A stretch of DNA of 64,000 bases from Octopus sinensis (lineage: Eukaryota): contig NC_043007.1 in NCBI RefSeq assembly GCF_006345805.1, positions 52,762,001 to 52,826,000 on the forward strand, in the 5' to 3' direction. Shown piece after piece: positions 17,704-59,275 of this stretch. The translations under genes were made by a program, and so were the position numbers. The notes under the pieces were generated by a model. The model made no database searches and had not been told where the DNA came from. It saw nothing but the letters and a program-made list of their open reading frames with translations. How positions within the stretch are numbered: the stretch's first letter is position 1; every line of letters starts with the position of its first letter.

Positions 17704-19904
17704 TCTCTATATTATAATTCTGAAATGCAAAAAGTTTGTTTTTCTGGTTTTGGGCATTGAGAACAAGTTAAAGGCCACTATATCCCGTCGGATTGACTCC
17801 AAAATTTACAGGGACATGTAAAATGAGGTGAGGATGTGAGTGGGCTAGGTTAGAAATCCCCATTTTAAAAGGTGTCATTGCTAGGGTCAAAAACGCATAC
17901 TTTGACAAGTCTACTCTCATTCTTTTATGTGTCTGTCTTTCTCCATCTCTCACTCTCTTCCCTTCCTTTCACCTTCTCTCTATAACGTCGTTTCACAACA
18001 TCTATTATCTTTCCCCCGCCGCCATCGGTTTCTATTATCTGCCTGGCTTCCTCCATCTCTCTCTTTCCTCCCTTCCTTTCACATTCTCTCTATAATGTCG
18101 TTTCACAGCGTCTATTATCTTTCCCTCGCCACCATCGGTTTCTATTATCTGCCTGGCTTCCTCCATCTCTCGCTTTCCTCCCTTCCTTTCACTTTCTCTC
18201 TATAATGTCGTTTGATAGCGTCTACTATCTTTCCTCTGCCACCTTCGCCAGCGCTGTCACTCTCTCTCTCTCTACGTCTGTCTGCATTCATAGAGAGAAT
18301 TATCATCGCCACCACCACCACAAAATCATGAGAATCTTTCTCTTAAAACAAATCATCTTTAGGTTTCAAAATATTTCATTTTTCAGTCCTCTTTCATATA
18401 TCATCTTTTCTTCCTCGATTTCTCTCTTTTCCCCCTTTCCTCCACATTCTCTCTCTATAACGACATTTGACACCTCCGCCATCTCTCTTTCTTCTCCAAC
18501 ACGTCTCTCAATGTATTTCTGTTTGTATCTATAAAGACGAAACGTGACAGCCGCAAAAGTTTAAATATTCCCACCACAGGTTTTCAGAAAGGTGATTTAT
18601 TATCTCCCACTACCACCGCACAATTATAACAGATATTATTTATCAGAAGATATGTTATTATTTTGTGTGGATACAAGATTTGCTGTGCTAAGAAACATTA
18701 TACCCTTTTAAAGAATTTATTTGTATGCTCAAGGCGAACGTCGTTAACAATAATTTGTCAGTAAATTTGAAAAATTTTCCAGTTTTGAAATATTTACTTC
18801 TTAACTATTTCATTCATTTTCTCATTGTAAACAAAATCATTTTTAGGGTTCAAAATATTTTATTTTTCAGTCTTCTCTTTCATATATCACCTTTTCTTCC
18901 TCGATCTCTCTGTTTTCCACCTTCCCTCCATTTTCTCTCTAGATAACGACGTTTGACACCTCCGCCGTCTCTCTGTTACTCTTTCTTCCAAAATTTACAG
19001 GGACATGTAAAATGAGGTGAGGATGTGAGTGGGCTAGCTTAGAAATCCCTATCTTAAAAGGTGTGGTTACTAGGGCAAAAATCGCACACTTCTTTCTTTC
19101 ATATATGACCTTTTCTTCCTCACCTCTCTGTCTCTTTCCTCCCTTCCTTTCACATTCTCTCTATAACGTCGTTTGATAGCGTCTGTTACTCTTTCTTCAA
19201 CCAACCCTCTCACTGTATGATTGTCGTTTCTTCTGCATGTCTTATCTCTTCATTCTTGAAAATAAAGACATTAAAAAGAACATGGTTCATAAAGAAGATT
19301 GGATTAAAATGTTTGCAAACATTTGATCCAACTCATTTGTCTCTTTATTCCTCATTTTCCGATTCCTTCTACGTCTCCATTGAACGGTGTTGTCAAGTTA
19401 TTGTTTCTTCGCCAACATAAGACATTCATAAAGTGAATGAGTTGTTAATTACATTTTATACACTGTTCCATTGTTTAGGTGGTGTCGAAAGGACTGGCAT
19501 ATGCCACCATATAACCTCATCAGTCAAACTCCCAACTCATGCGTTCACGTCATGATATTCTTTCTACAAACTGAGCTGGGTGTGAATTCTAATTTCATAC
19601 ACTATTGCAGATGTGAGTTTACAGTCTGCCTTTTTTGGTTTAAACTATCTTCCTGCAGGTTAAAAACCTTTATTTTTTAGAGTCCTCAACAATATACGCC
19701 ACCGAAATTCCATTTTTCAATTTTATGATTATACCCAGAGTGCTCTAATTGAATATGAACTGTCTTCCCATTGGCGGACGTTGTCTTTTTTTTTTTTTTA
19801 GAAATAAACGCATTGCCTCTTTTGTTTTAAAACAATGCTACATTAATACATTGGTCCAACAACCAAAACATGACCCGCGCGTAGAGCAGGTCACCTTAAG
19901 CTAG
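17704..19904 (+). mobile_element. Non-autonomous Helitron A1
   Basis: 5' A|TCTCTATATTATAATTCTG; 3' GC hairpin gacccgcgcgtagagcaggtc (19872-19892) followed by CTAG (19901-19904). Degenerate RepHel-like peptides TGICHH..SVKLP and LNNIRHRNSIFQ at about 19490-19740. Internal duplications. Confidence 0.85.
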
Positions 19905-21544
<1,640 letters not shown>

Positions 21545-51099: not shown

Positions 51100-51983
51100 G
51101 CAAGAGAAGGAGGTATGTGTGTGTGTATGTGTGTAATGATAGCACGTGTGTGTGTGTGTGTGGTTGTGGCTGTTAATCTGTGTGTGGTTCTTGTGTCTAC
51201 CTACCCATGTGCGTAGAAGAATGGTCAGTGGAAGGTACTGGTAGTTTGAAGTATGTGCGTGTATGCATATGTATTGTGTGTGTGTTTTGTTTGTAGTGTG
51301 TGTGTGTGTATGTATGTGTTTGTGTGTGTATGCATAAAGGTTGTGTGTGTGGGGAATAATTGTGCTTTACTTTATGTATGTGTGCGTGTGTGCTTGTATG
51401 TGCGTATACATGTATGTATGAGTGTGTACTGTGTGTATAGGAGGTATGTGTGGGTTCATTTGTGTGAGTCTGTATGTGCGTATTGTGTGTATGTGTGTAT
51501 GCGTATGTGGCTGTATATACGTGTATCTGTGGGGTTGTGTGTTATTCGTGTGCGCATGTTTGTGTGCGTCTGTGTCTGTGTCTATATGTGTATACGTGTG
51601 TGTGCGCGTGTAAGCATATATTGTGTGTGTATGTATATGTGTGTATGTGAATTTGTGTATGTGTGTGTGTGTGCGGGTTGTGTGTGTGAGGGTTTGTGTA
51701 GGCGTAATGTGCATGCGTGTGCTTGTGTGTGTGTGCGTGTGTGTTTGTGCCCATGTGAGTATAATTGTGTGCGTGTCTGTATGTGTATTGTTTGTTGTAG
51801 GTATATGTGCGAACCTGTGCTAGTGTGTGTATGTATGTGTGTATATGTGTGTGTGCGAGTATTATGTGCATATGTATGTGCATGTGTGTATGTGCTTGCG
51901 TGTGTATATGTGCTTGCGTGTGTATATGTGCTTGCGTGTGTATATGTGTGTGTGAACGTGGAGATGTGTGTCAGGTTGTGTGC

Positions 51984-52021
<38 letters not shown>

Positions 52022-52084
52022 TACATACACGCTTTATATGTGTGTGTACGCATTGTATATACAAATTATATATATATAATATAT

Positions 52085-52140
<56 letters not shown>
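51100..52140. repeat. TG/TA-rich compound microsatellite
   Basis: Degenerate (TG)n followed by (TA)n. Other microsatellites: (TA)n at 20520-20665, (AAT)/(GAT)n at 12158-12215, (GATT)/(GATA)n at 34555-34655. Confidence 0.95.
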
Positions 52141-52141
<1 letters not shown>

Positions 52142-52454
52142 TACAGATATATACACTTTGTATATATACATTATATATACATATTTATATATAGACTAGC
52201 ATTAAAGACCCGTCGTTGCTGGGTCATAGTGCTAGTGCATATATATATGTGTATATATATGTGTAGATATTACATGTACATTTATATATATACATCTACA
52301 CATAAAATGCAAAATACAAAGTTATATCTTGATATCGCTAGTGATAACAATTCTCAAAATATATAACAAAATATATTGTTAGCCCATCTCTTGTAATTTT
52401 GCTCAATTGTATCTTGTCCTCTCTTTTGTATAGAAGTGTGGCCTACCTCATTTA

Positions 52455-52654
52455 AAATTTTTTTCCGGGACATCCTACGTCCCAGATATAATGGTAAAAA
52501 TAAAATATTTCCACTTTGCAAGTTTGAGTCGAGTACTCCCTTGCACGCTCCGTTGATTCGAACCTTGCTTCTATTGTGGCGAATTTACCGCCTCTGATTA
52601 GATATCTTTCATAAGTCGCACCAAGACACTTTTCGAGGGTGCTTTCCTCCATGT
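52455..52654 (-). pseudogene. Right half of a split, more distant ORF1 fragment (left half at about 56347-56412)
   Basis: MEESTLEKCLG...RGGKFATIEARF then, after a frameshift, LPLYLGRRMSR. Homologous to IEKCLG...RGKKYGTVEVR...WPSYKGRRGVR of the two inserted copies. Confidence 0.8.
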
Positions 52655-54563
52655 TGTTTTATTATTACCCACAAGGGGCGAACATAGATGGGACAATACA
52701 ATCGGGAAAATGAATAATGAATTATGAAGTTTGTACAATGTGGTGTAATGCCCACTCGATCCCCGAAATCGAGCGGTTACATTTCGTCATTTGTTTTTTA
52801 TTCGTCAACAATATTTTCCAAATAAAACATTTTATACATTTTCAACATACATTTCAAAAATTTTACAAAGTTCAACATTTTTTTTTTTCCAGAATTTAAA
52901 GTTCTTTTTATCATTTCCAAATTAAAGTTTTCACAATACCTTTTCTTTTATATATACTCCATTATCTCTACCAAATCTGAGTAAACTTCCATCGTTCGTG
53001 GCCACCTTGTAAGTCGGCATTTCATGTTTTGACACGTTCTTGCCAGCTGTCTCGATGAACGCCTCGGCGTCGTTCTCGTGGACGAGTGCACCTGTTTCTT
53101 TCCATTCGGTGCCCATCCTGACCCACGTATATCCGTTTGTTACGTTTATTAAATCTTCCATCTCCTCACAGTGCCTGTGATGGATCAACGTTCCATAGTA
53201 TTTGAATTTTCTATTCGTACCTACGTTTTCTCTAGTTTTTCTCTTAGGACTTACTTCCTCTTTTTTCTCCTCCCTCGGTTTCTCTTTCTCTCTTTTTGCT
53301 TTCTCTTCTTTCTTTTTCCTTCTCTTGTCTTTTTGGCTCTTTGTCTGCCGTCTCTCTACCCTGTGCCTTGAGTTCCTTTCCTGTTGTTTCTTTTCCTTTT
53401 TGCATACCATCTTTTCCTTTCTCTTGGTTCTGTTCCTTCTCTTGTTCTTTTCCTGCTTTTTCTCTTTCCTTTAATGTACTTTCCTTTTCTTTCTCTTGCT
53501 TCTGCCTTGGCTCCTTCTCCACTACTTCTGCACCCTGTGAATTTTGCTCCTTTTCTACTATCTTCTTCCCTTTGTTTTCATTTTCCTTCAGTGCGCTGTT
53601 ACTTCCCTTCTCTTGTTGTTTCTCCGTTATTTCCTTTTCCTTGTTTTCGCTGTTCTTTCCTTCGTGTTCGTTTTCCTTCTCTCCACTTTGTGTCTCTTTT
53701 TGCTCCGCTGTGAATTCATAGGGCGGACATTCCTTTTTTATGTGCCCTCTTGATCCGCACAGGTAGCAATTCGGTTTTCTGCCTTCCACTATTACACTAA
53801 TTGTTTTCTCGTTTTCTATTTCTATTTGGAAGGGAAATCTTTCGATGTCTTCCATTGTGGCCATCAGCCACAACTCTACTCCGAATCCCTTCCAATTTAC
53901 AACGTTGGTCTCCTTGATTGACCCTATTTCTACTTCCTCTTTTGTTGCCCCAATAATGGCTGTTACCAGCATTTCTGTTTTAATATCTGGGGGCACCTTT
54001 GGGACTCTTACCCGTACCCCTCGTCTTCCTTTATACGTCAGCCACATGGTGAAATTTTCCGCTTTCAGGACAGTGGAAGCCAATGAGGCCGCCACTTCCT
54101 TTGTTGCGCATCTCACCTCCACCGTACCATATTTCTTTCCTCTGTCTACAAAAGTCGCTTTTTTCATGATGTCCCCCAGACATTTCTCTATTTCTTCAAT
54201 CGTCACTCTCACCAGTTTTCTCGTGGTTCTATCTTGCGTTCTATACGTTATCGTCTTGTTATTTCTCTCTTCTATTGTTTCCACAGGCGGGACCAGCTTC
54301 ACGCTGTCACCCTCCCTTTTGACGAACTTCTCGTATTCCTTCAATTGTTCTTTTCTAAAGAACACTTCTCTTATTCTAAGAGACTCGTCACTTTTTGTTG
54401 TGGCGACCCCCGCGTAAGTCTCCATTACTTGAGGGTTGACACACCTTCTATAAAAGGTTCAAACATGCAGCGGCAAACGCCTCGCGTGATTCAATTTTTT
54501 GACAATTTTTAACAGTTTTTTTCCAATTTTCACATACAAAATAACTCACAACACACGTGGATA
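52655..54563 (-). mobile_element. ORF1-only L1/Tx1-like retroelement, copy 2
   Basis: Frame 54425-52931 with one frameshift (393-aa ORF plus the C-terminal part of ORF 52931..53410), CCHC knuckle CYLCGSRGHIKKEC, same 3' terminal motif as copy 1, and 14-bp direct repeats. Confidence 0.8.
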
Positions 54564-54577
54564 GATTTCCTCCATGT

Positions 54578-56346
54578 GATTTTATTACTACTCACAAGGG
54601 GCGAACATAGATGGGACAATACAATCGGGGAACTTAAAATAAGAAAGCGAATGACAAGAAAAGGAAAAAATAAAAGTAAAAATGACATATGAAAGAATAT
54701 TTACAATGAGATGTAAATGTCCACTCGATCCCCGGAATCGAGAGGTTACATTTTCGTCACATATATTTCACAAAATTTTCTTTTTTCTCTTTTTATTTTT
54801 TTTCTTCTCACAATTCTATACATACTCTATAATTGTTTCCACTTCGCTGAAGTCTAACACTGAGCCCTCAGGCAGCCGCTCTCTCACTCGAACCTTCGTG
54901 TAAAATATTACACTCTCTCCGGCAGCTCTGAGGAACTCAGCGGCTCTTTCTTCGGGGGATTAGAGCAGTCTCCTGCCACCGGTCGGTCATCCTGTTGACC
55001 CATATATGTCCCTCCGTTTCACTTGTCAAGTCTTTCATTATAGGGCAGAAATGGAAGGTTACTAACTTGTAGTAATAGTAATCTTGTTTCCGTCCTACGT
55101 TTTCCTTCATTTTCCTTTTCGGGCTTATTTCTTCCTTGTTCCCCTCTCTTTGTTTCTCTCTTTCTCTCTTTTTGCCTTCTTTTCTTTCTCCTTCCTTCTC
55201 TTGTCTTTTTGGTTCTTTGTCTGTTCTCTCTTTCTCGCGTGTTTTATGTTCCTTTTCTTTTTCCTTTTGTGTGCCGTCTTTTCTTTTCGTTTGATTCTGA
55301 TCCCTCTCTTGTTTTTTTCCTATTGTTTCTTTTTCCTTTTTTTTTTCCTGACTCTGTTTTGGTTCTATTTCTTTCTTTTCTTTTATTTCTTTTTCCTTCA
55401 TTGACTTATTATTTCCTTTCTCTTGTTGTTTTGTTTCCTTTTCTATGTTTTCTTTCTCATTTACAGTATTCTTCTTTTCTTCAAGTTCCTGCTTGCCCTC
55501 TGCTACGAATTCATATAACAGGCACTCTTTTTTAATGTGCCCCCTTGTCCCACACAAGTAACAGTTTGGTTTTCTCCCCTCTACAATTACGCTGAGGGTT
55601 TTTTCCTCTTCAATTTCAATTCTGTAGGGAAACCTTTCAATATCCTCTTTTGTGGTCATCAACCACAATTCTACCCCATATCCTCTCCAGTTTACCGCGT
55701 TGGACTCCTTAATTGATTCCACCTCCACTTCCTCTTCTGCTGCTCCTAGAATAGCTGTTGCCAGCCATTCTGTTTTCACTTCTGGGGGTATATTCGGGAT
55801 TTTAACCCGGACCCCTCTTCTTCCCTTGTATGAGGGCCACATTGTGAATTTTTCGGCTCTTAGTACGGTGGTAGCCAGAGGGGCCGCAATTTCTTCCGTT
55901 GCACATCTCACCTCCACTGTACCAAATTTCTTGCCTCTACTCACGTAGGTTATTTTCCCCATTATGTCTCCCAGACATTTTTCAATTTCGTCTATCTCCA
56001 CTCTTGCCAGTTTCTTCGTATATTTTTGTCTTGGGTTCTGTATGTCACCGTCTTGCTTTCTTTATCCTCTTTTGCTTTCGCGGGGGGGATTAGCTTCACG
56101 CTATCACCCTCCCTTTTGAAGAGCTTTTCATATTCTTTGAGTTTCTCTTTCTCAAAGAAAACCTCCTTTATGACTATCGACGAATCGTTATTTTTCCCGG
56201 TGACCCCCGCGTAAGTCGCCATGACTAGAGGGTCAATTCACCTTCTTCGGAAGGTTTCCACACGTGGAGGCAAACGCCTCGCGCGATATCAAATCAATTT
56301 ACACAGAAAAAATATCACCGTCTAGTCACAGATAACAACACACATA
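54578..56346 (-). mobile_element. ORF1-only L1/Tx1-like retroelement, copy 1
   Basis: One ORF1-like frame 56222-54816 with two frameshifts, CCHC knuckle CYLCGTRGHIKKEC, short 3' UTR with AATAAA, and 14-bp direct repeats on both sides. No endonuclease or RT sequence. Confidence 0.8.
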
Positions 56347-59275
56347 GCTTTCCTCCATGTGTTCAAATCTTTTTTCTCTACATTGTATACTTTATAGACA
56401 ATAGTCTTTTCTTTAATTTAATTTTTTATTATACATCTGGACTATTCCATTTCTGCACGCTAATTTTATTTTTAATTTATTTCCATTCATGTGAAACCAC
56501 TTATTCAAGTTCAAATCATAGATGCAAATTTATACCAATTGCTATTTTTACTTTTGTTATGTTACGATTATATTATACTTTAGTTTGATTTTAATTATTA
56601 CTTACTACATATAATTCAATTGTTATTATTATTTTTATTGTTAAAGTGAAAGCATCTGACATAAAATAGAGAAACGTTTTTGTTTCACTTTTAACACGTA
56701 ATACTGAAATAGTGGAGAAGATATGATATTGCTATGGGCTCGCTCTAGGCAAGAAGTTGAACATTTTTTTTGCCTATGAAACTACATGGACCCTAAGTAA
56801 GACATGTGTAAAATTTGAATGAAATTGGTTGTGTAGTTCTCAAGTTTTAGGGAAACACACAGACAGATAGACACACATTCTCAGTTTTATATATATAAAG
56901 ATACACACACACATATATAAATTAACCCAATAAATATCTGATTCATAATATTTGTTCTCATGATTGTGTGGTGGTGGTGGTGGCGATAATAATTTTCTCT
57001 ATGAATGCAGACAGACATACAGAGAAAGAGAGGGAGAGAAAGAGTGACAGAGCTGGCGAAGGTGGCGGGAGAAAGAGAGTGGAAGTTGTCAAACGTTGTT
57101 ATAGATCGAAAGTGAAGGGAAGAAAGTGAGAGAGATGGAGGAAGAGGGGCAGGTGTGCGAAAGAGAAACGGCAATTCATAATATTTGTTCTCATGATTGT
57201 GTGGTGGTGGTGGCAATAATTATTCTCTCTATGAATGCAGACAGATGTAGAGAGAGAGAGACAGACAGACAGATTATGTGGGAGAAAGAGTGACAGCACT
57301 GACAAAAGCGGCGGGGAAAAGATAGTAGTAGCTGTCAAATGTCGTTATAGAGAGAAAGAGAAGGGAAGGGAGGAAAGAGAGAGAGAGAGACGGCTGAAAA
57401 CAGGCAGATAAGAGAAAGAGAGAAACGACAAACACTTGTCAAAGTGTGGGTTTTTTTGGCCTAGTAACCACAGCTTTTGAGATAGGGATTTCTATCCTAG
57501 TCCACTCACATCCTCACCTCTTTTTACATGTCCCTGTAAATTTTGGAGCGTATCCCACAGGATCTAGTGCCCTTTCACCCGTTCCAATGCCAAAACCAGA
57601 CAAACAAACAAACTTTTCGCATTTCAGATTTATAATATAGAGAATAAATTCCAAATACAAATCTTGAAAATTTCAATAAATACAGGTACCTCCCCTAGTA
57701 AACAAAATTTATATATGGACCCACAAATTACAATTTTTTACTCGTGGTCCACCTTAAAGCTTCTGTGGACCCCTGGCGGTCTATGTGGGCCTCAGTTGAG
57801 AAACTCTGCTCCAGAGGCTCCCTGATGGTGGTAGATAGTTTCTGCTACCTGGTGGTGGTAGATAGTTTCTGCTACCTGGTGGTGAAGGATTATCCAAAAG
57901 AACAGTTGCTAGAATAAGAACAGGATGGAGAAAATTCAGAGAGCTATTACTCCATCTAGCAACAAAAGTTGCAGGGTGAACGTCAGCCAGTATGATGCTT
58001 GAATATGAACTTCAATGCTACATAGTAGTGAGATATGGTAGTGAGTGCAGAGGACAAATAAAGACTAGAGAGGAATGAAGCTCGTATGCTGCATTGAATG
58101 TGCCATATTGGTGTGAATATATGCTGAAGTGCTAATGCACTGAGCGGAAAAATTATGCATAAGTGGTATCAGATGTAGTTTACAAGAGAGAAAACTGCAC
58201 TGCTTTGGTCATGTGATGCATATGGATGAGAACAGCTGCATAAAAAAGTGTTAGTTGCTTAAACTGGATGATAAGAGGAGACCCAGAAAGACATGGAATG
58301 AAGTAGTGAGGGCTCGAGATATTGAACCGCATGGAGGAAATGATAGAGGATCAAGATGATTGGCAATTTGCTGTGCTTGAGATGACCTACACATAACAGA
58401 AAATATGTCCTAAAAGCATTTTTCTATGCTTGGATAACATGATGGACGGTGTCCCTACACCCTATCAAGCATTTGTCACATCTCATCTCTCTACCAACCC
58501 TCTTCCATACAAGCTGAGCACAAGTATTTCCCACACCATCTACCAGCCCACTCATGTTGGGTTTAGTAATTCCCACATTTCTTTTTCCTATCTATTACCC
58601 TTACCCATGTTCTGGGCACTGTCCCTACACCTATATTGCTCTGTCAAGCACATCCCACATCCCAACTCCCTACCCACTCCTCCTATAACAATTGTCCCCC
58701 TTGACACATATTATATCCACTAACACCTTGTCAAATCAATTTTGAATTTGGATCTTTTGATTTAACATTCTTCAGTGTAAGGGATAAATTTTTCATAATT
58801 TTACAACACAATATTTCATTTAATGTACACTTTCATAATATATCCACTTAAATTTTTGTATTCAAACAATGCTTTCATCGCAAAAGAGGTTATATATCTA
58901 ATTAAGTTTATTGGTAAACAAAAATATTTCTGATTTTCTTTTGAACCATTTCACTTTTAAAGCCTTTTGATAAAAACAACATTTAAAAAATTTTTTTGAA
59001 GCATTACCTTATGCTTAACTGTTTGTAACTTATCTAATAAATAATGTGAAATAAAAGCTACAATGTCATAGCTATAACCTGTAAACTCAAACCTAAACAG
59101 GACAGGGGTGTGTGCTAAAAAGTAACCTAAAAAGTTCACATTGGCTATGTATGTTGTGTTCTCAGCTGATATAAGAAATAAGTCTAATTGCAAATAGAAG
59201 AGTTGGAGTCAGAGTCGATTGTAACATAAATAGAGGGGTCAGAATGTAAAAATGAAAGGAAAAAACCCAACTTAC

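What the first reader, a model, noticed from the sequence alone, without database searches (positions are those of the whole stretch)
52641..56360. Two diverged ORF1-only retroelements inserted in tandem at the same 14-bp site: candidate target-specific non-autonomous family
Seen: the 14-mer ACATGGAGGAAAGC (minus strand) occurs at 56347-56360, 54564-54577 (one mismatch) and 52641-52654. It brackets two units of 1769 and 1909 bp. Each unit has a short leader, one ORF1-like CCHC protein, a 240-280 bp UTR and AATAAA, and no ORF2. The two proteins differ at many residues, unlike a recent tandem duplication. Established: L1-derived ORF1-only HAL1 elements exist, Tx1-clade elements are often target-specific, and repeated insertion at one site gives the pattern TSD-element-TSD-element-TSD. 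Inference: a site-specific HAL1-like family mobilised in trans by a Tx1-type partner. I do not know of one described in cephalopods.
Basis: partly seen in the sequence, partly recalled or inferred. Interest (0 to 1): 0.88.

Follow-up and report, generated by a model that had tools for sequence, protein, structure and literature searches.

The report
Site-specific ORF1-only retroelements in octopus
Two dead copies of "gag-only" jumping genes sit head to tail at one exact spot inside an octopus Helitron-like repeat, and sister loci show that they, their relatives and a full endonuclease/reverse-transcriptase element with the same 50-base tail repeatedly insert at this spot, which is a new example of a known kind of targeted retrotransposition.

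Summary
On the minus strand, ACATGGAGGAAAGC (one copy ...ATC) brackets units of 1769 bp (A) and 1909 bp (B). They are about 70% identical, but their last 53 nt are 94% identical. Each unit carries one CCHC ORF and no ORF2. Both ORFs are frameshifted here.

Eight related Octopus vulgaris loci show A, B and a third type, F, stacked at the same place. That place lies 6-7 bp past a conserved about 530-bp block of a repeat with Helitron-like ends. Six stacks end in a about 5-kb APE-RT-zf-RVT element, C, which has an ORF1 homolog and the same about 50-nt 3' tail.

A and B occur at two sites, and their junction repeat is always the local one: the 14-mer, or ATTCCAGTCT(GTTATA). The second sequence is single-copy in three unoccupied sites, so these repeats are target-site duplications. 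One unit is 99.7% identical between two stacks whose flanks differ by 5%. Intact 467-493-aa ORFs exist, with dN/dS about 0.2.

The closest precedent is crocodilian Tx1-Mar/SINEU-3 in a Mariner transposon. Not shown: an empty 14-mer site, genome-wide occupancy, the RT clade, and mobilisation in trans.

The parts
52196..56901 (-). Host repeat T, a non-autonomous Helitron-like element, with everything inserted in it
   Evidence: The 5' end TCTTTATATATATAAAACTGAG follows an A in 6 of 6 loci, with unrelated outer flanks. The 3' end is the hairpin GACCC(A/G)GCAACGACGGGTC, then TTTAATGCTAG, followed by T, in the window, L002, L006 and L010. There are no terminal inverted repeats.
56368..56901 (-). 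UP, the conserved upstream block of T, ending ...GTAGAGAAAAAAGA. It is the proposed recognition side of the target.
   Evidence: UP is 93-96% identical and lies directly upstream of the stack in L001, L002, L003, L004, L006, L008 and L010.
56361..56367 (-). TTTGAAC, the 7 nt between UP and the inferred first-strand nick (...AAC|A)
   Evidence: The same 7 nt occur in L001, L004, L006 and L010. At site 2 the spacer after ...AAGAAGA is GCTAAC.
56347..56360 (-). Junction 1, 14-mer ACATGGAGGAAAGC: the upstream target-site duplication of unit A
54578..56346 (-). Unit A, an ORF1-only non-autonomous retroelement (dead copy). ATG at 56222, frameshift near 56013-56025, CCHC at 55522-55563, 3' UTR hairpin at 54724-54742, shared 3' tail at about 54578-54626.
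   Evidence: A is 96-97% identical to L004 units 1-2 and 95% to L008 unit 1. The frames are shown. An intact 467-aa relative is L001_u4.
54564..54577 (-). Junction 2, 14-mer ACATGGAGGAAATC, between A and B
   Evidence: The ...AAATC variant also occurs at the A|C junctions of L005 and L010.
52655..54563 (-). Unit B, an ORF1-only non-autonomous retroelement of a second lineage (dead copy). ATG at 54425, CCHC at 53727-53768, frameshift near 53244, C-terminal domain in another frame to about 52931, hairpin at 52755-52773, shared 3' tail at about 52655-52703.
   Evidence: B is 93-95% identical to the B units of L002 and L008. An intact 493-aa relative is L008_u2.
52641..52654 (-). Junction 3, 14-mer ACATGGAGGAAAGC: the downstream copy, continuous with the host's D fragment
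   Evidence: The same 14-mer followed by ACC(C/T)TCGAAAAGTGTCTTGG follows the 3' end of element C in L006 and L010.
52386..52640 (-). D fragment, a decayed piece of an ORF1-like gene (…LEKCLG…GGKFATIEARF…) that is part of this variant of T
   Evidence: Reading. It is present downstream of the stack in L006 and L010 and absent from the T variant of L002, L003 and L008.
52362..52377 (-). Unoccupied, mutated site 2 (AATATATTTTGTTATA between GGGCTAAC and TATTTTGAG)
   Evidence: It aligns with the single-copy AATTCCAGTCTGTTATA of L006 and L010 and with the duplicated copies of L002.
52196..52361 (-). DOWN, the downstream block of T, with terminal hairpin and CTAG (52196-52225)
   Evidence: DOWN is 94-95% identical to the sequence after element C in L002 and after the D fragment in L006 and L010.

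Best explanation
Units A and B are decayed copies of two old lineages of ORF1-only non-LTR retrotransposons. This is functionally the HAL1 arrangement.

Shown:
- A and B keep a gene homologous to ORF1 of an autonomous APE-endonuclease/reverse-transcriptase element, C. The predicted protein has tandem RRM-like folds and one CCHC knuckle.
- They have no ORF2.
- They share with C only a short homologous leader motif and the last about 50 nt.

Inferred mechanism:
- C's ORF2 protein recognises this shared tail on C, A, B and F RNAs.
- It nicks one strand of the Helitron-like repeat T 6-7 bp past the end of the conserved UP block (...AAC|A).
- It reverse-transcribes from that nick. A second nick 10-17 bp downstream produces the target-site duplication.
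- Recognition lies on the UP side, so each insertion regenerates the site. The next element lands immediately upstream of the previous one and duplicates whatever now lies there.
- This gives TSD-A-TSD-B-TSD in the window and stacks of up to at least 8 units elsewhere, usually with C at the bottom.
- Homogeneous runs inside some stacks were probably also enlarged by unequal crossing-over.
For: - Anatomy of the window units.
- ORF homology: B versus C ORF1 is 38% identical over 151 aa, E 1e-36. A versus a 450-aa C-type ORF1 is 35% identical over 231 aa, E 2e-42.
- Fold: the model (pLDDT 73.5) matches tandem-RRM proteins.
- Partner element: C in L006 has an intact 1129-aa ORF2 with Exo_endo_phos, RVT_1 and zf-RVT.
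- Shared tail: the 3' tail motif is present at the end of every A, B, F and C copy.
- Same place in nine loci: the window, L001-L006, L008 and L010. UP sits directly upstream wherever the start of the stack was within the fetched DNA.
- The junction repeat follows the site, not the element. A and B carry the 14-mer at site 1 (window) and ATTCCAGTCT... at site 2 (L002, L003, L008).
- Site 2 is single-copy when empty, in L006, L010 and (mutated) the window.
- In L002, element C is flanked by a 16-bp duplication of that sequence.
- The 14-mer is continuous with the host D fragment after C in L006 and L010, exactly as after B in the window.
- Independent and recent insertion: L004 unit 0 versus L001 unit 2 gives 1772 matches, 4 mismatches and 1 gap, while the adjacent UP blocks differ at 14 of 268 positions.
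- Stack composition differs in every locus. The 5' junctions vary by a few nt within stacks (L005, L010), as expected for separate integrations.
- Function is maintained: intact ORFs of 467, 493 and 473 aa exist for A, B and F, with dN/dS 0.19-0.22 at dS 0.9-1.5.
- Precedent for sequential insertions sandwiching a TSD in a DNA transposon by Tx1-mobilised elements: PMC4494074.
Against: - No T copy with an unoccupied 14-mer site was seen. All loci were found through annotated ORFs, so occupancy and specificity are not measured genome-wide.
- C lies at the DOWN-proximal end in every stack whose end was seen except the window. This could also mean that a T+C composite was copied first, by Helitron transposition or duplication, and filled later.
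- Some junction variants (...AAATC, ACGTGTCGGAAATC) recur in different loci together with particular units. Part of the upstream repeat may therefore arrive on the RNA rather than being copied from the target.
- The shared tail shows no significant fold or covariation, so what is recognised is unknown.
- Related elements also form stacks outside T (L007, L009), so the T specificity belongs to some lineages only.
- Runs such as L001 units 4-6 (99-100% identical, with identical junctions) fit unequal crossing-over as well as repeated insertion.
Confidence: 0.8

Rival explanations
1. The block is a tandemly duplicated gene family carried, or captured, by the Helitron and expanded only by unequal crossing-over. 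On this view the 14-mer is simply the edge of the duplicated segment.
For: The arrays are regular, with a period of about 1.78 kb. Runs of 99-100% identical units with identical junctions occur in L001. Every sampled A/B/F copy lies inside T.
Against: - A and B are 70% identical, yet the 14-mers around them are 13-14 of 14 identical.
- The same A and B lineages occur at a second site with a different bracketing repeat, which is single-copy in empty sites.
- One unit is 99.7% identical between loci whose flanks differ by 5%.
- The units share their 3' tail with an EN-RT element.
- The 5' junctions vary between units.
Confidence: 0.07
2. The 14-mer is the 5' end of each element's RNA, a co-transcribed leader, and not a target-site duplication. 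Its presence after B is a coincidence of the host sequence.
For: Junction variants travel with units. ACGTGTCGGAAATC precedes the near-identical units in L001 and L004, while the next junction in L004 differs by 1 nt. The ...AAATC variant recurs at internal junctions of several loci, whereas the copy before the D fragment is always ...AAAGC.
Against: - A and B at site 2 lack the 14-mer altogether and carry the site-2 repeat instead.
- The 14-mer is in frame and continuous with the ORF1-like D fragment of the host.
- A mixed model remains open and is compatible with the main explanation. In it, the RNA starts in the upstream copy and the 5' junction is resolved by homology, as reported for rDNA-specific elements and cited in PMC4494074.
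Confidence: 0.08
3. A-B arrived in the window as one piece, by retrotransposition of a read-through dimer transcript or by duplication of a pre-formed stack.
For: A is followed by B in L008 as well.
Against: The internal A|B junction is of the local type in each case: the 14-mer in the window and ATTCCAGTCTTCATTGA in L008. A copied dimer would keep the donor's junction.
Confidence: 0.04
4. The ORF is a host-domesticated multicopy gene, and the purifying selection reflects a cellular function.
For: dN/dS is about 0.2 across three lineages. Public annotations list the ORFs as 'uncharacterized protein LOC...' genes.
Against: - Most copies are broken.
- The copies behave as insertions with TSDs and a LINE 3' tail.
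- The selection signature is what is expected for a protein that an active retroelement lineage needs.
- No expression or orthology data were available.
Confidence: 0.03

Closest known systems
Crocodilian Tx1-Mar LINE families and SINEU-3 inserted in the DNA transposon Mariner-N4_AMi (Kojima 2015, PMC4494074)
   Same: An APE-type LINE and its non-autonomous partner prefer one position in a DNA transposon family. There is a defined TSD of about 16 bp. The paper states that tandem copies 'sandwiching a TSD' arise by sequential insertion.
   Different: - The non-autonomous partner here is a 1.8-1.9-kb element that encodes a selected ORF1-type protein, not a SINE with an snRNA head.
- The target is a Helitron-like repeat.
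- Stacks reach at least 8 units and mix several lineages with the autonomous element.
- The host is a cephalopod.
Tx1L in Tx1D of Xenopus laevis, and other target-specific Tx1-clade families such as Keno, Kibi, Koshi, Mutsu and Dewa (own knowledge; the clade's target specificity is cited in PMC4494074)
   Same: The element has ORF1 with a CCHC knuckle and ORF2 with APE, RT and a C-terminal Cys/His motif. It inserts at a fixed position of another repeated element.
   Different: Clade membership of element C was not tested by phylogeny. The best named hit is only 31% identical. ORF1-only partners are not part of the descriptions I know.
HAL1 ('half-L1') of mammals (PMC5753468)
   Same: It is a non-autonomous LINE derivative that encodes only the ORF1 protein and presumably borrows ORF2p.
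   Different: - HAL1 derives from mammalian L1, whose ORF1p has a coiled coil, an RRM and a CTD, and it inserts without site specificity.
- Here ORF1p has tandem RRM-like folds, a CCHC knuckle, a Lys/Glu-rich stretch and a private C-terminal domain.
- The element shares only about 50 nt of tail with its helper, and insertion is targeted.
R1/R2 in rDNA and HeT-A/TART at Drosophila telomeres (own knowledge)
   Same: R1 and R2 reuse one site, and co-transcribed target sequence may guide the 5' junction. HeT-A is a Gag-only element that forms head-to-tail arrays together with RT-encoding partners.
   Different: The target here is a mobile Helitron-like repeat, not rDNA or a chromosome end. TSDs separate the units. 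The arrays are internal to chromosomes, at 12-157 Mb on the records.

Membership tests
Non-LTR (LINE-dependent) retroelement | Units are flanked by target-site duplications that are single-copy in unoccupied sites | tested here: met
   Site 2 is duplicated around B, A, F and C and single-copy in L006, L010 and the window. For the 14-mer (site 1) no empty site was seen. Support there comes from its continuity with the host D fragment.
Non-LTR (LINE-dependent) retroelement | The 3' end is shared with an autonomous element that encodes EN and RT | tested here: met
   The last about 50 nt are 90-100% identical between A/B/F and C. C's ORF2 carries Exo_endo_phos, RVT_1 and zf-RVT.
Non-LTR (LINE-dependent) retroelement | Mobilised in trans by the partner's ORF2 protein | not testable with these tools
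   This is inferred from the shared tail and shared sites. It needs a retrotransposition assay.
HAL1-like (ORF1-only LINE derivative) | Encodes a homolog of the partner's ORF1 protein and lacks ORF2 | tested here: met
   BLASTP E values are 1e-36 and 2e-42 against C-type ORF1. No EN or RT coding occurs in any of about 40 units. Intact ORFs and dN/dS of about 0.2 are shown.
HAL1 proper (mammalian L1 derivative) | Derived from the mammalian L1 lineage, with a coiled-coil/RRM/CTD ORF1p | tested here: not met
   The ORF has tandem RRM-like folds plus a CCHC knuckle and comes from an octopus element. The likeness to HAL1 is functional only.
Tx1 clade of non-LTR retrotransposons | The RT groups with Tx1 references in a phylogeny | not tested
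   No reference set was available. The best named hit is an automatically named 'Transposon TX1 149 kDa protein' at 31% identity. Other hits are plant-type L1 elements. A 2026 O. vulgaris repeat survey lists 'L1-Tx1' families without detail.
Tx1 clade of non-LTR retrotransposons | Architecture: ORF1 with a CCHC knuckle, and ORF2 with APE, RT and a C-terminal Cys/His motif | tested here: met
   This architecture is shared with other L1-superfamily lineages, so it is not decisive.
Target-specific retrotransposon | Copies lie at the same position of the same target sequence, at independent genomic loci | tested here: met
   9 of 9 loci carrying A, B or F lie in T, 6-7 bp past ...AAGA(AGA), on at least 6 chromosomes and with different outer flanks. 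The sample is small and was found through annotated ORFs.
Target-specific retrotransposon | Few or no copies outside the target, with the occupied fraction of targets measured genome-wide | not testable with these tools
   No octopus genome could be searched by DNA. The related lineages E (L007) and a C-type array (L009) lie outside T.
Helitron (host repeat T) | 5'-TC and 3'-CTAG termini, a hairpin about 11 nt before the 3' end, insertion between A and T, and no TIR or TSD | tested here: met
   The flanks are mostly (TA)n, which weakens the A|T criterion.
Helitron (host repeat T) | Termini shared with an autonomous Rep/Hel-encoding element | not tested
   No autonomous partner was sought.

The most novel reading that the evidence does not exclude
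The integration machinery reads the Helitron's upstream block and cuts at a fixed offset whatever lies downstream. Each Helitron copy then acts as a self-renewing landing pad that records insertions in order, newest next to UP. Their upstream junction may be guided by target sequence carried on the RNA.
Probability: 0.35. Interest if true: 0.7.

Novelty: new variant of a known kind. Interest (0 to 1): 0.55.

Why it matters
- It adds a cephalopod case to the short list of APE-type LINEs that target another transposon.
- As far as my literature searches reached, it is the first case in which the dependent partner is an ORF1-encoding (HAL1-like) element rather than a SINE.
- The stacks give a natural, ordered record of competition between an autonomous element and several protein-coding parasites at one address.
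- The apparent recognition of an upstream block, with cleavage at a fixed offset, is of practical interest for work on site-specific retrotransposon insertion.
- Public octopus annotations list these ORFs as ordinary genes (for example 'uncharacterized protein LOC118764671' and 'EPM2A-interacting 1-like'). These should be treated as repeats.

Tried and rejected
- Tandem Repeats Finder on L001 gave nothing, because its longest period is 500 bp. BLAST was used instead.
- The exact 14-mer is absent from L001. This first suggested that it was not a TSD. The cause turned out to be a diverged local variant.
- Pfam recognises only the CCHC knuckle in A and B, and nothing in their C-terminal domain.
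- ORF2 of C has no close annotated relatives (best 58% identity), so further C copies could not be found through proteins.
- The window's own 393-aa ORF is not on record, so the window's source assembly was not identified.
- Rfam gave only sub-threshold microsatellite look-alikes.
- The shared 3' tail shows no significant fold or covariation. The upstream UTR hairpin CTCGAT...ATCGAG is stable (z -2.1 and -3.1) but is absent from C, so it cannot be the shared recognition signal.
- The collections that can be searched by DNA hold no octopus genome, so no genome-wide census and no search for empty sites were possible.
- Considered and rejected: telomeric HeT-A-like arrays (the loci are internal and TSDs are present), a Penelope-like partial tandem (no Penelope RT/GIY-YIG, and the partner is APE type), and a single dimer insertion (the junctions are of the local type).


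Full report
**Observation.** On the minus strand the 14-mer ACATGGAGGAAAGC lies at 56347-56360 and 52641-52654, and ACATGGAGGAAATC lies at 54564-54577. At up to 2 mismatches the window has one other, unrelated match. The expected count is 0.48, and none of 100 shuffles reaches 4. The 14-mers bracket 1769 bp (unit A, 54578-56346) and 1909 bp (unit B, 52655-54563). A and B are 70.4% identical over 1312 nt, but 94.3% identical over their last 53 nt. Each unit has one ORF with a zf-CCHC hit, AATAAA a few nt from its end, and no EN or RT coding. Both ORFs are broken. A has a frameshift near 56013-56025. B has one near 53244, after which a conserved C-terminal region continues in another frame.

**Source and relatives.** Protein search finds only Octopus proteins, in 9 clusters. 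I fetched ten loci around these and later hits: L001-L008 and L010 from O. vulgaris GCA_951406725.2, and L009 from O. sinensis.

**Stacks at one address.** In eight O. vulgaris loci on six chromosomes, units of type A, type B or a third type F form head-to-tail stacks. F is about 72% identical to both A and B. The stacks are:

| Locus | Stack, from UP to DOWN |
|---|---|
| Window | A, B |
| L001 | A, at least 8 units |
| L002 | B, B, C |
| L003 | B, C |
| L004 | A, A, A, C |
| L005 | A (at least 8 units), C |
| L006 | A, C |
| L008 | F, A, B, C |
| L010 | A, A, A, A, C |

Wherever the upstream end lies within the fetched DNA, the stack is preceded by the same about 530-bp block, UP, which is 93-96% identical to window 56368-56901. 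Wherever the downstream end lies within it, the stack is followed by the same about 165-bp block, DOWN (window 52196-52361).

**The host repeat.** UP begins TCTTTATATATATAAAACTGAG after an A in 6 of 6 loci, and the sequence beyond it is unrelated between loci. DOWN ends with the hairpin GACCCGGCAACGACGGGTC, then TTTAATGCTAG, followed by T. UP plus DOWN is therefore a mobile repeat, T, with Helitron-type ends. The flanks are often (TA)n, so the A|T criterion is weak, and no Rep/Hel partner was sought.

**The autonomous partner.** Element C is about 5 kb. In L006 it has an intact ORF2 of 1129 aa with Exo_endo_phos, RVT_1 and zf-RVT domains, preceded by an ORF1. The window's B ORF is 38% identical to that ORF1 over 151 aa (E 1e-36). 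An intact A ORF is 35% identical over 231 aa to a 450-aa C-type ORF1 (E 2e-42). A model of the B N-terminal 244 aa (pLDDT 73.5) matches tandem-RRM proteins. C ends with the same about 50 nt as A, B and F (GATTGTAnTGTCCCnTCTATGTT...AATAAAAYM), and the sequence upstream of that tail is unrelated. The nearest named ORF2 relative is an automatically named 'Transposon TX1' protein at 31% identity. No phylogeny was made.

**Is the 14-mer a target-site duplication?** The host T comes in two variants.
- Variant 1 occurs in the window, L001, L004, L005, L006 and L010. Here UP...AAGA(AGA)TTTGAAC is followed by the stack. Every junction carries a form of the 14-mer. After the last element comes ACATGGAGGAAAGC, joined to a about 265-290-bp decayed ORF1-like piece, the D fragment, and then DOWN.
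- Variant 2 occurs in L002, L003 and L008 and lacks the D fragment. Here UP...AAGAAGAGCTAAC is followed by the stack, and every junction carries ATTCCAGTCT. In L002, C is flanked by the 16-bp ATTCCAGTCTGTTATA.

A and B occur in both variants and always carry the local repeat. In L008 the A|B junction is ATTCCAGTCTTCATTGA, whereas in the window it is the 14-mer. The site-2 sequence is present once, between GCTAA(C/A) and TATTTTGAG, in the unoccupied site 2 of L006 and L010. A mutated form lies at window 52362-52377. Site 2 therefore has the full signature of a TSD. For the 14-mer the evidence is indirect. It is continuous and in frame with the host's D fragment (…MEES|TLEKCLG…). The same 14-mer plus D fragment follows C in L006 and L010, just as it follows B in the window. 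No unoccupied site 1 was seen.

**Independent insertions rather than one copied block.**
- Stack composition differs in every locus.
- L004's UP-proximal unit differs from L001 unit 2 at 4 substitutions and 1 gap in 1777 aligned positions, while the neighbouring UP blocks differ at 14 of 268.
- In L005 and L010 the few nt at each 5' junction differ from unit to unit.
- A and B are too diverged (70%) for an in-place duplication around 14-mers that still match at 13-14 of 14 positions.
- Runs of 99-100% identical units with identical junctions (L001 units 4-6) show that unequal crossing-over probably also enlarges stacks.

**Where the cut falls.** In both host variants the first duplicated base lies 6-7 nt after ...AAGAAGA. 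In three loci this is ...AAGA, where AGA is missing. The cut follows ...AAC (CCTGCC in L003). In variant 1, site 2 keeps its own immediate context but now lies about 290 bp from UP, and it is empty in 3 of 3 cases. This suggests, but does not prove, that recognition lies in UP and that whatever follows the nick is duplicated (10, 14, 16 or 17 bp). That would explain why the site is reusable and why new units pile up next to UP. Under this reading the window's A is younger than B.

**A function maintained.** Intact ORFs of 467 aa (A, L001_u4), 493 aa (B, L008_u2) and 473 aa (F, L008_u0) exist among about 20 units examined. Pairwise dN/dS is 0.19-0.22 at dS 0.9-1.5. The last about 100 aa and the Lys/Glu-rich linker have no counterpart in C's ORF1.

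**Open points.**
- C sits at the DOWN-proximal end of six stacks. The exceptions are the window, and L001 and L003, whose ends were not reached. A T+C composite may therefore have been multiplied before A/B/F arrived.
- Junction variants shared between loci (...AAATC, and ACGTGTCGGAAATC with the near-identical L001 and L004 units) hint that part of the upstream repeat is carried on the RNA. The 5' junction would then be resolved by homology, as discussed for co-transcribed site-specific elements in PMC4494074.
- The shared tail has no significant predicted fold.
- Related lineages stack outside T. In L007 an E-type unit (76% identical to A) lies behind a 130-bp 3' fragment, both followed by AGAAACGTYAGCACGCCG, in a different repeat. 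In L009 (O. sinensis) one full C-type element is followed by at least 3 internally deleted copies with a 3.57-kb period, with no UP upstream.

**Comparison with what is known.** Kojima 2015 (PMC4494074) describes crocodilian Tx1 families and SINEU-3 that prefer one position in Mariner-N4_AMi. That paper reports tandem copies 'sandwiching a TSD' and attributes them to sequential insertion. It is the same behaviour. HAL1 is defined as a non-autonomous L1 derivative that encodes only ORF1p (PMC5753468). The octopus units work like HAL1 but are not members of that mammalian family. A 2026 repeat survey of O. vulgaris lists 13 'L1-Tx1' families and mentions neither site specificity nor ORF1-only partners (PMC13282606). 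My searches found no description of this system.

**Verdict.** This is a new variant of a known kind: a target-specific APE-type LINE whose dependent partners are protein-coding ORF1-only elements, aimed at a Helitron-like repeat. The window copies themselves are dead. Interest is moderate (0.55).

Noticed in passing
L009 4510-21353 (O. sinensis CM016867.1): A head-to-tail array of one near-full C-type element followed by at least 3 internally deleted copies (ORF1 joined to the 3' half of ORF2), with a 3.57-kb period. All junctions read ...AATAAAACA|GATTATTTGATG. No UP block lies upstream.
   Followed up: partly
L007 10130-12310 (O. vulgaris OX597815.1): A fourth ORF1-only lineage, E, lies outside the Helitron-like repeat. 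A 130-bp 3' fragment and a full unit are each followed by AGAAACGT(C/T)AGCACGCCG. From memory, the downstream flank (GGCGAAATGCTTAGCGG...) looks like an abundant octopus SINE. The public gene model P0003 splices an upstream exon onto this ORF.
   Followed up: partly
window 52386-52640 (-): The D fragment is a decayed piece of an ORF1-like gene built into one variant of the Helitron-like repeat. It is bounded by AAGA(A)GA-like sequence on both sides, so it may be an older insertion a few bp from the present hot spot.
   Followed up: partly
L004 9295-11078 versus L001 3829-5604: Two A units about 50 Mb apart on one chromosome are 99.7% identical. Together with the intact ORF2 of the L006 C element, this suggests recent, possibly ongoing, activity.
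   Followed up: partly
L002 6644-7329, L004 8602-9301, L006 8640-9290: In these three loci the UP block carries an internal partial duplication of about 150-200 bp, which the window and L008 lack.
   Followed up: no
window 51140-52140: A long imperfect CA/TG- and TA-rich microsatellite tract lies next to the 3' end of the Helitron-like repeat. It yields spurious ORFs of up to 295 aa and sub-threshold Rfam microRNA look-alikes.
   Followed up: no
window 56941-57431 (also 17704-20375): Just outside the 5' end of the Helitron-like repeat lie two about 230-bp direct repeats that are 74% identical. They are related to several copies elsewhere in the window. They are unclassified.
   Followed up: no
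proteins P0001-P0009 and P0049-P0054: Public annotations name these retroelement ORFs as ordinary genes, for example 'uncharacterized protein LOC118764671', 'LOC115215450' and 'EPM2A-interacting 1-like'. Several models start at internal Met codons of broken copies.
   Followed up: no
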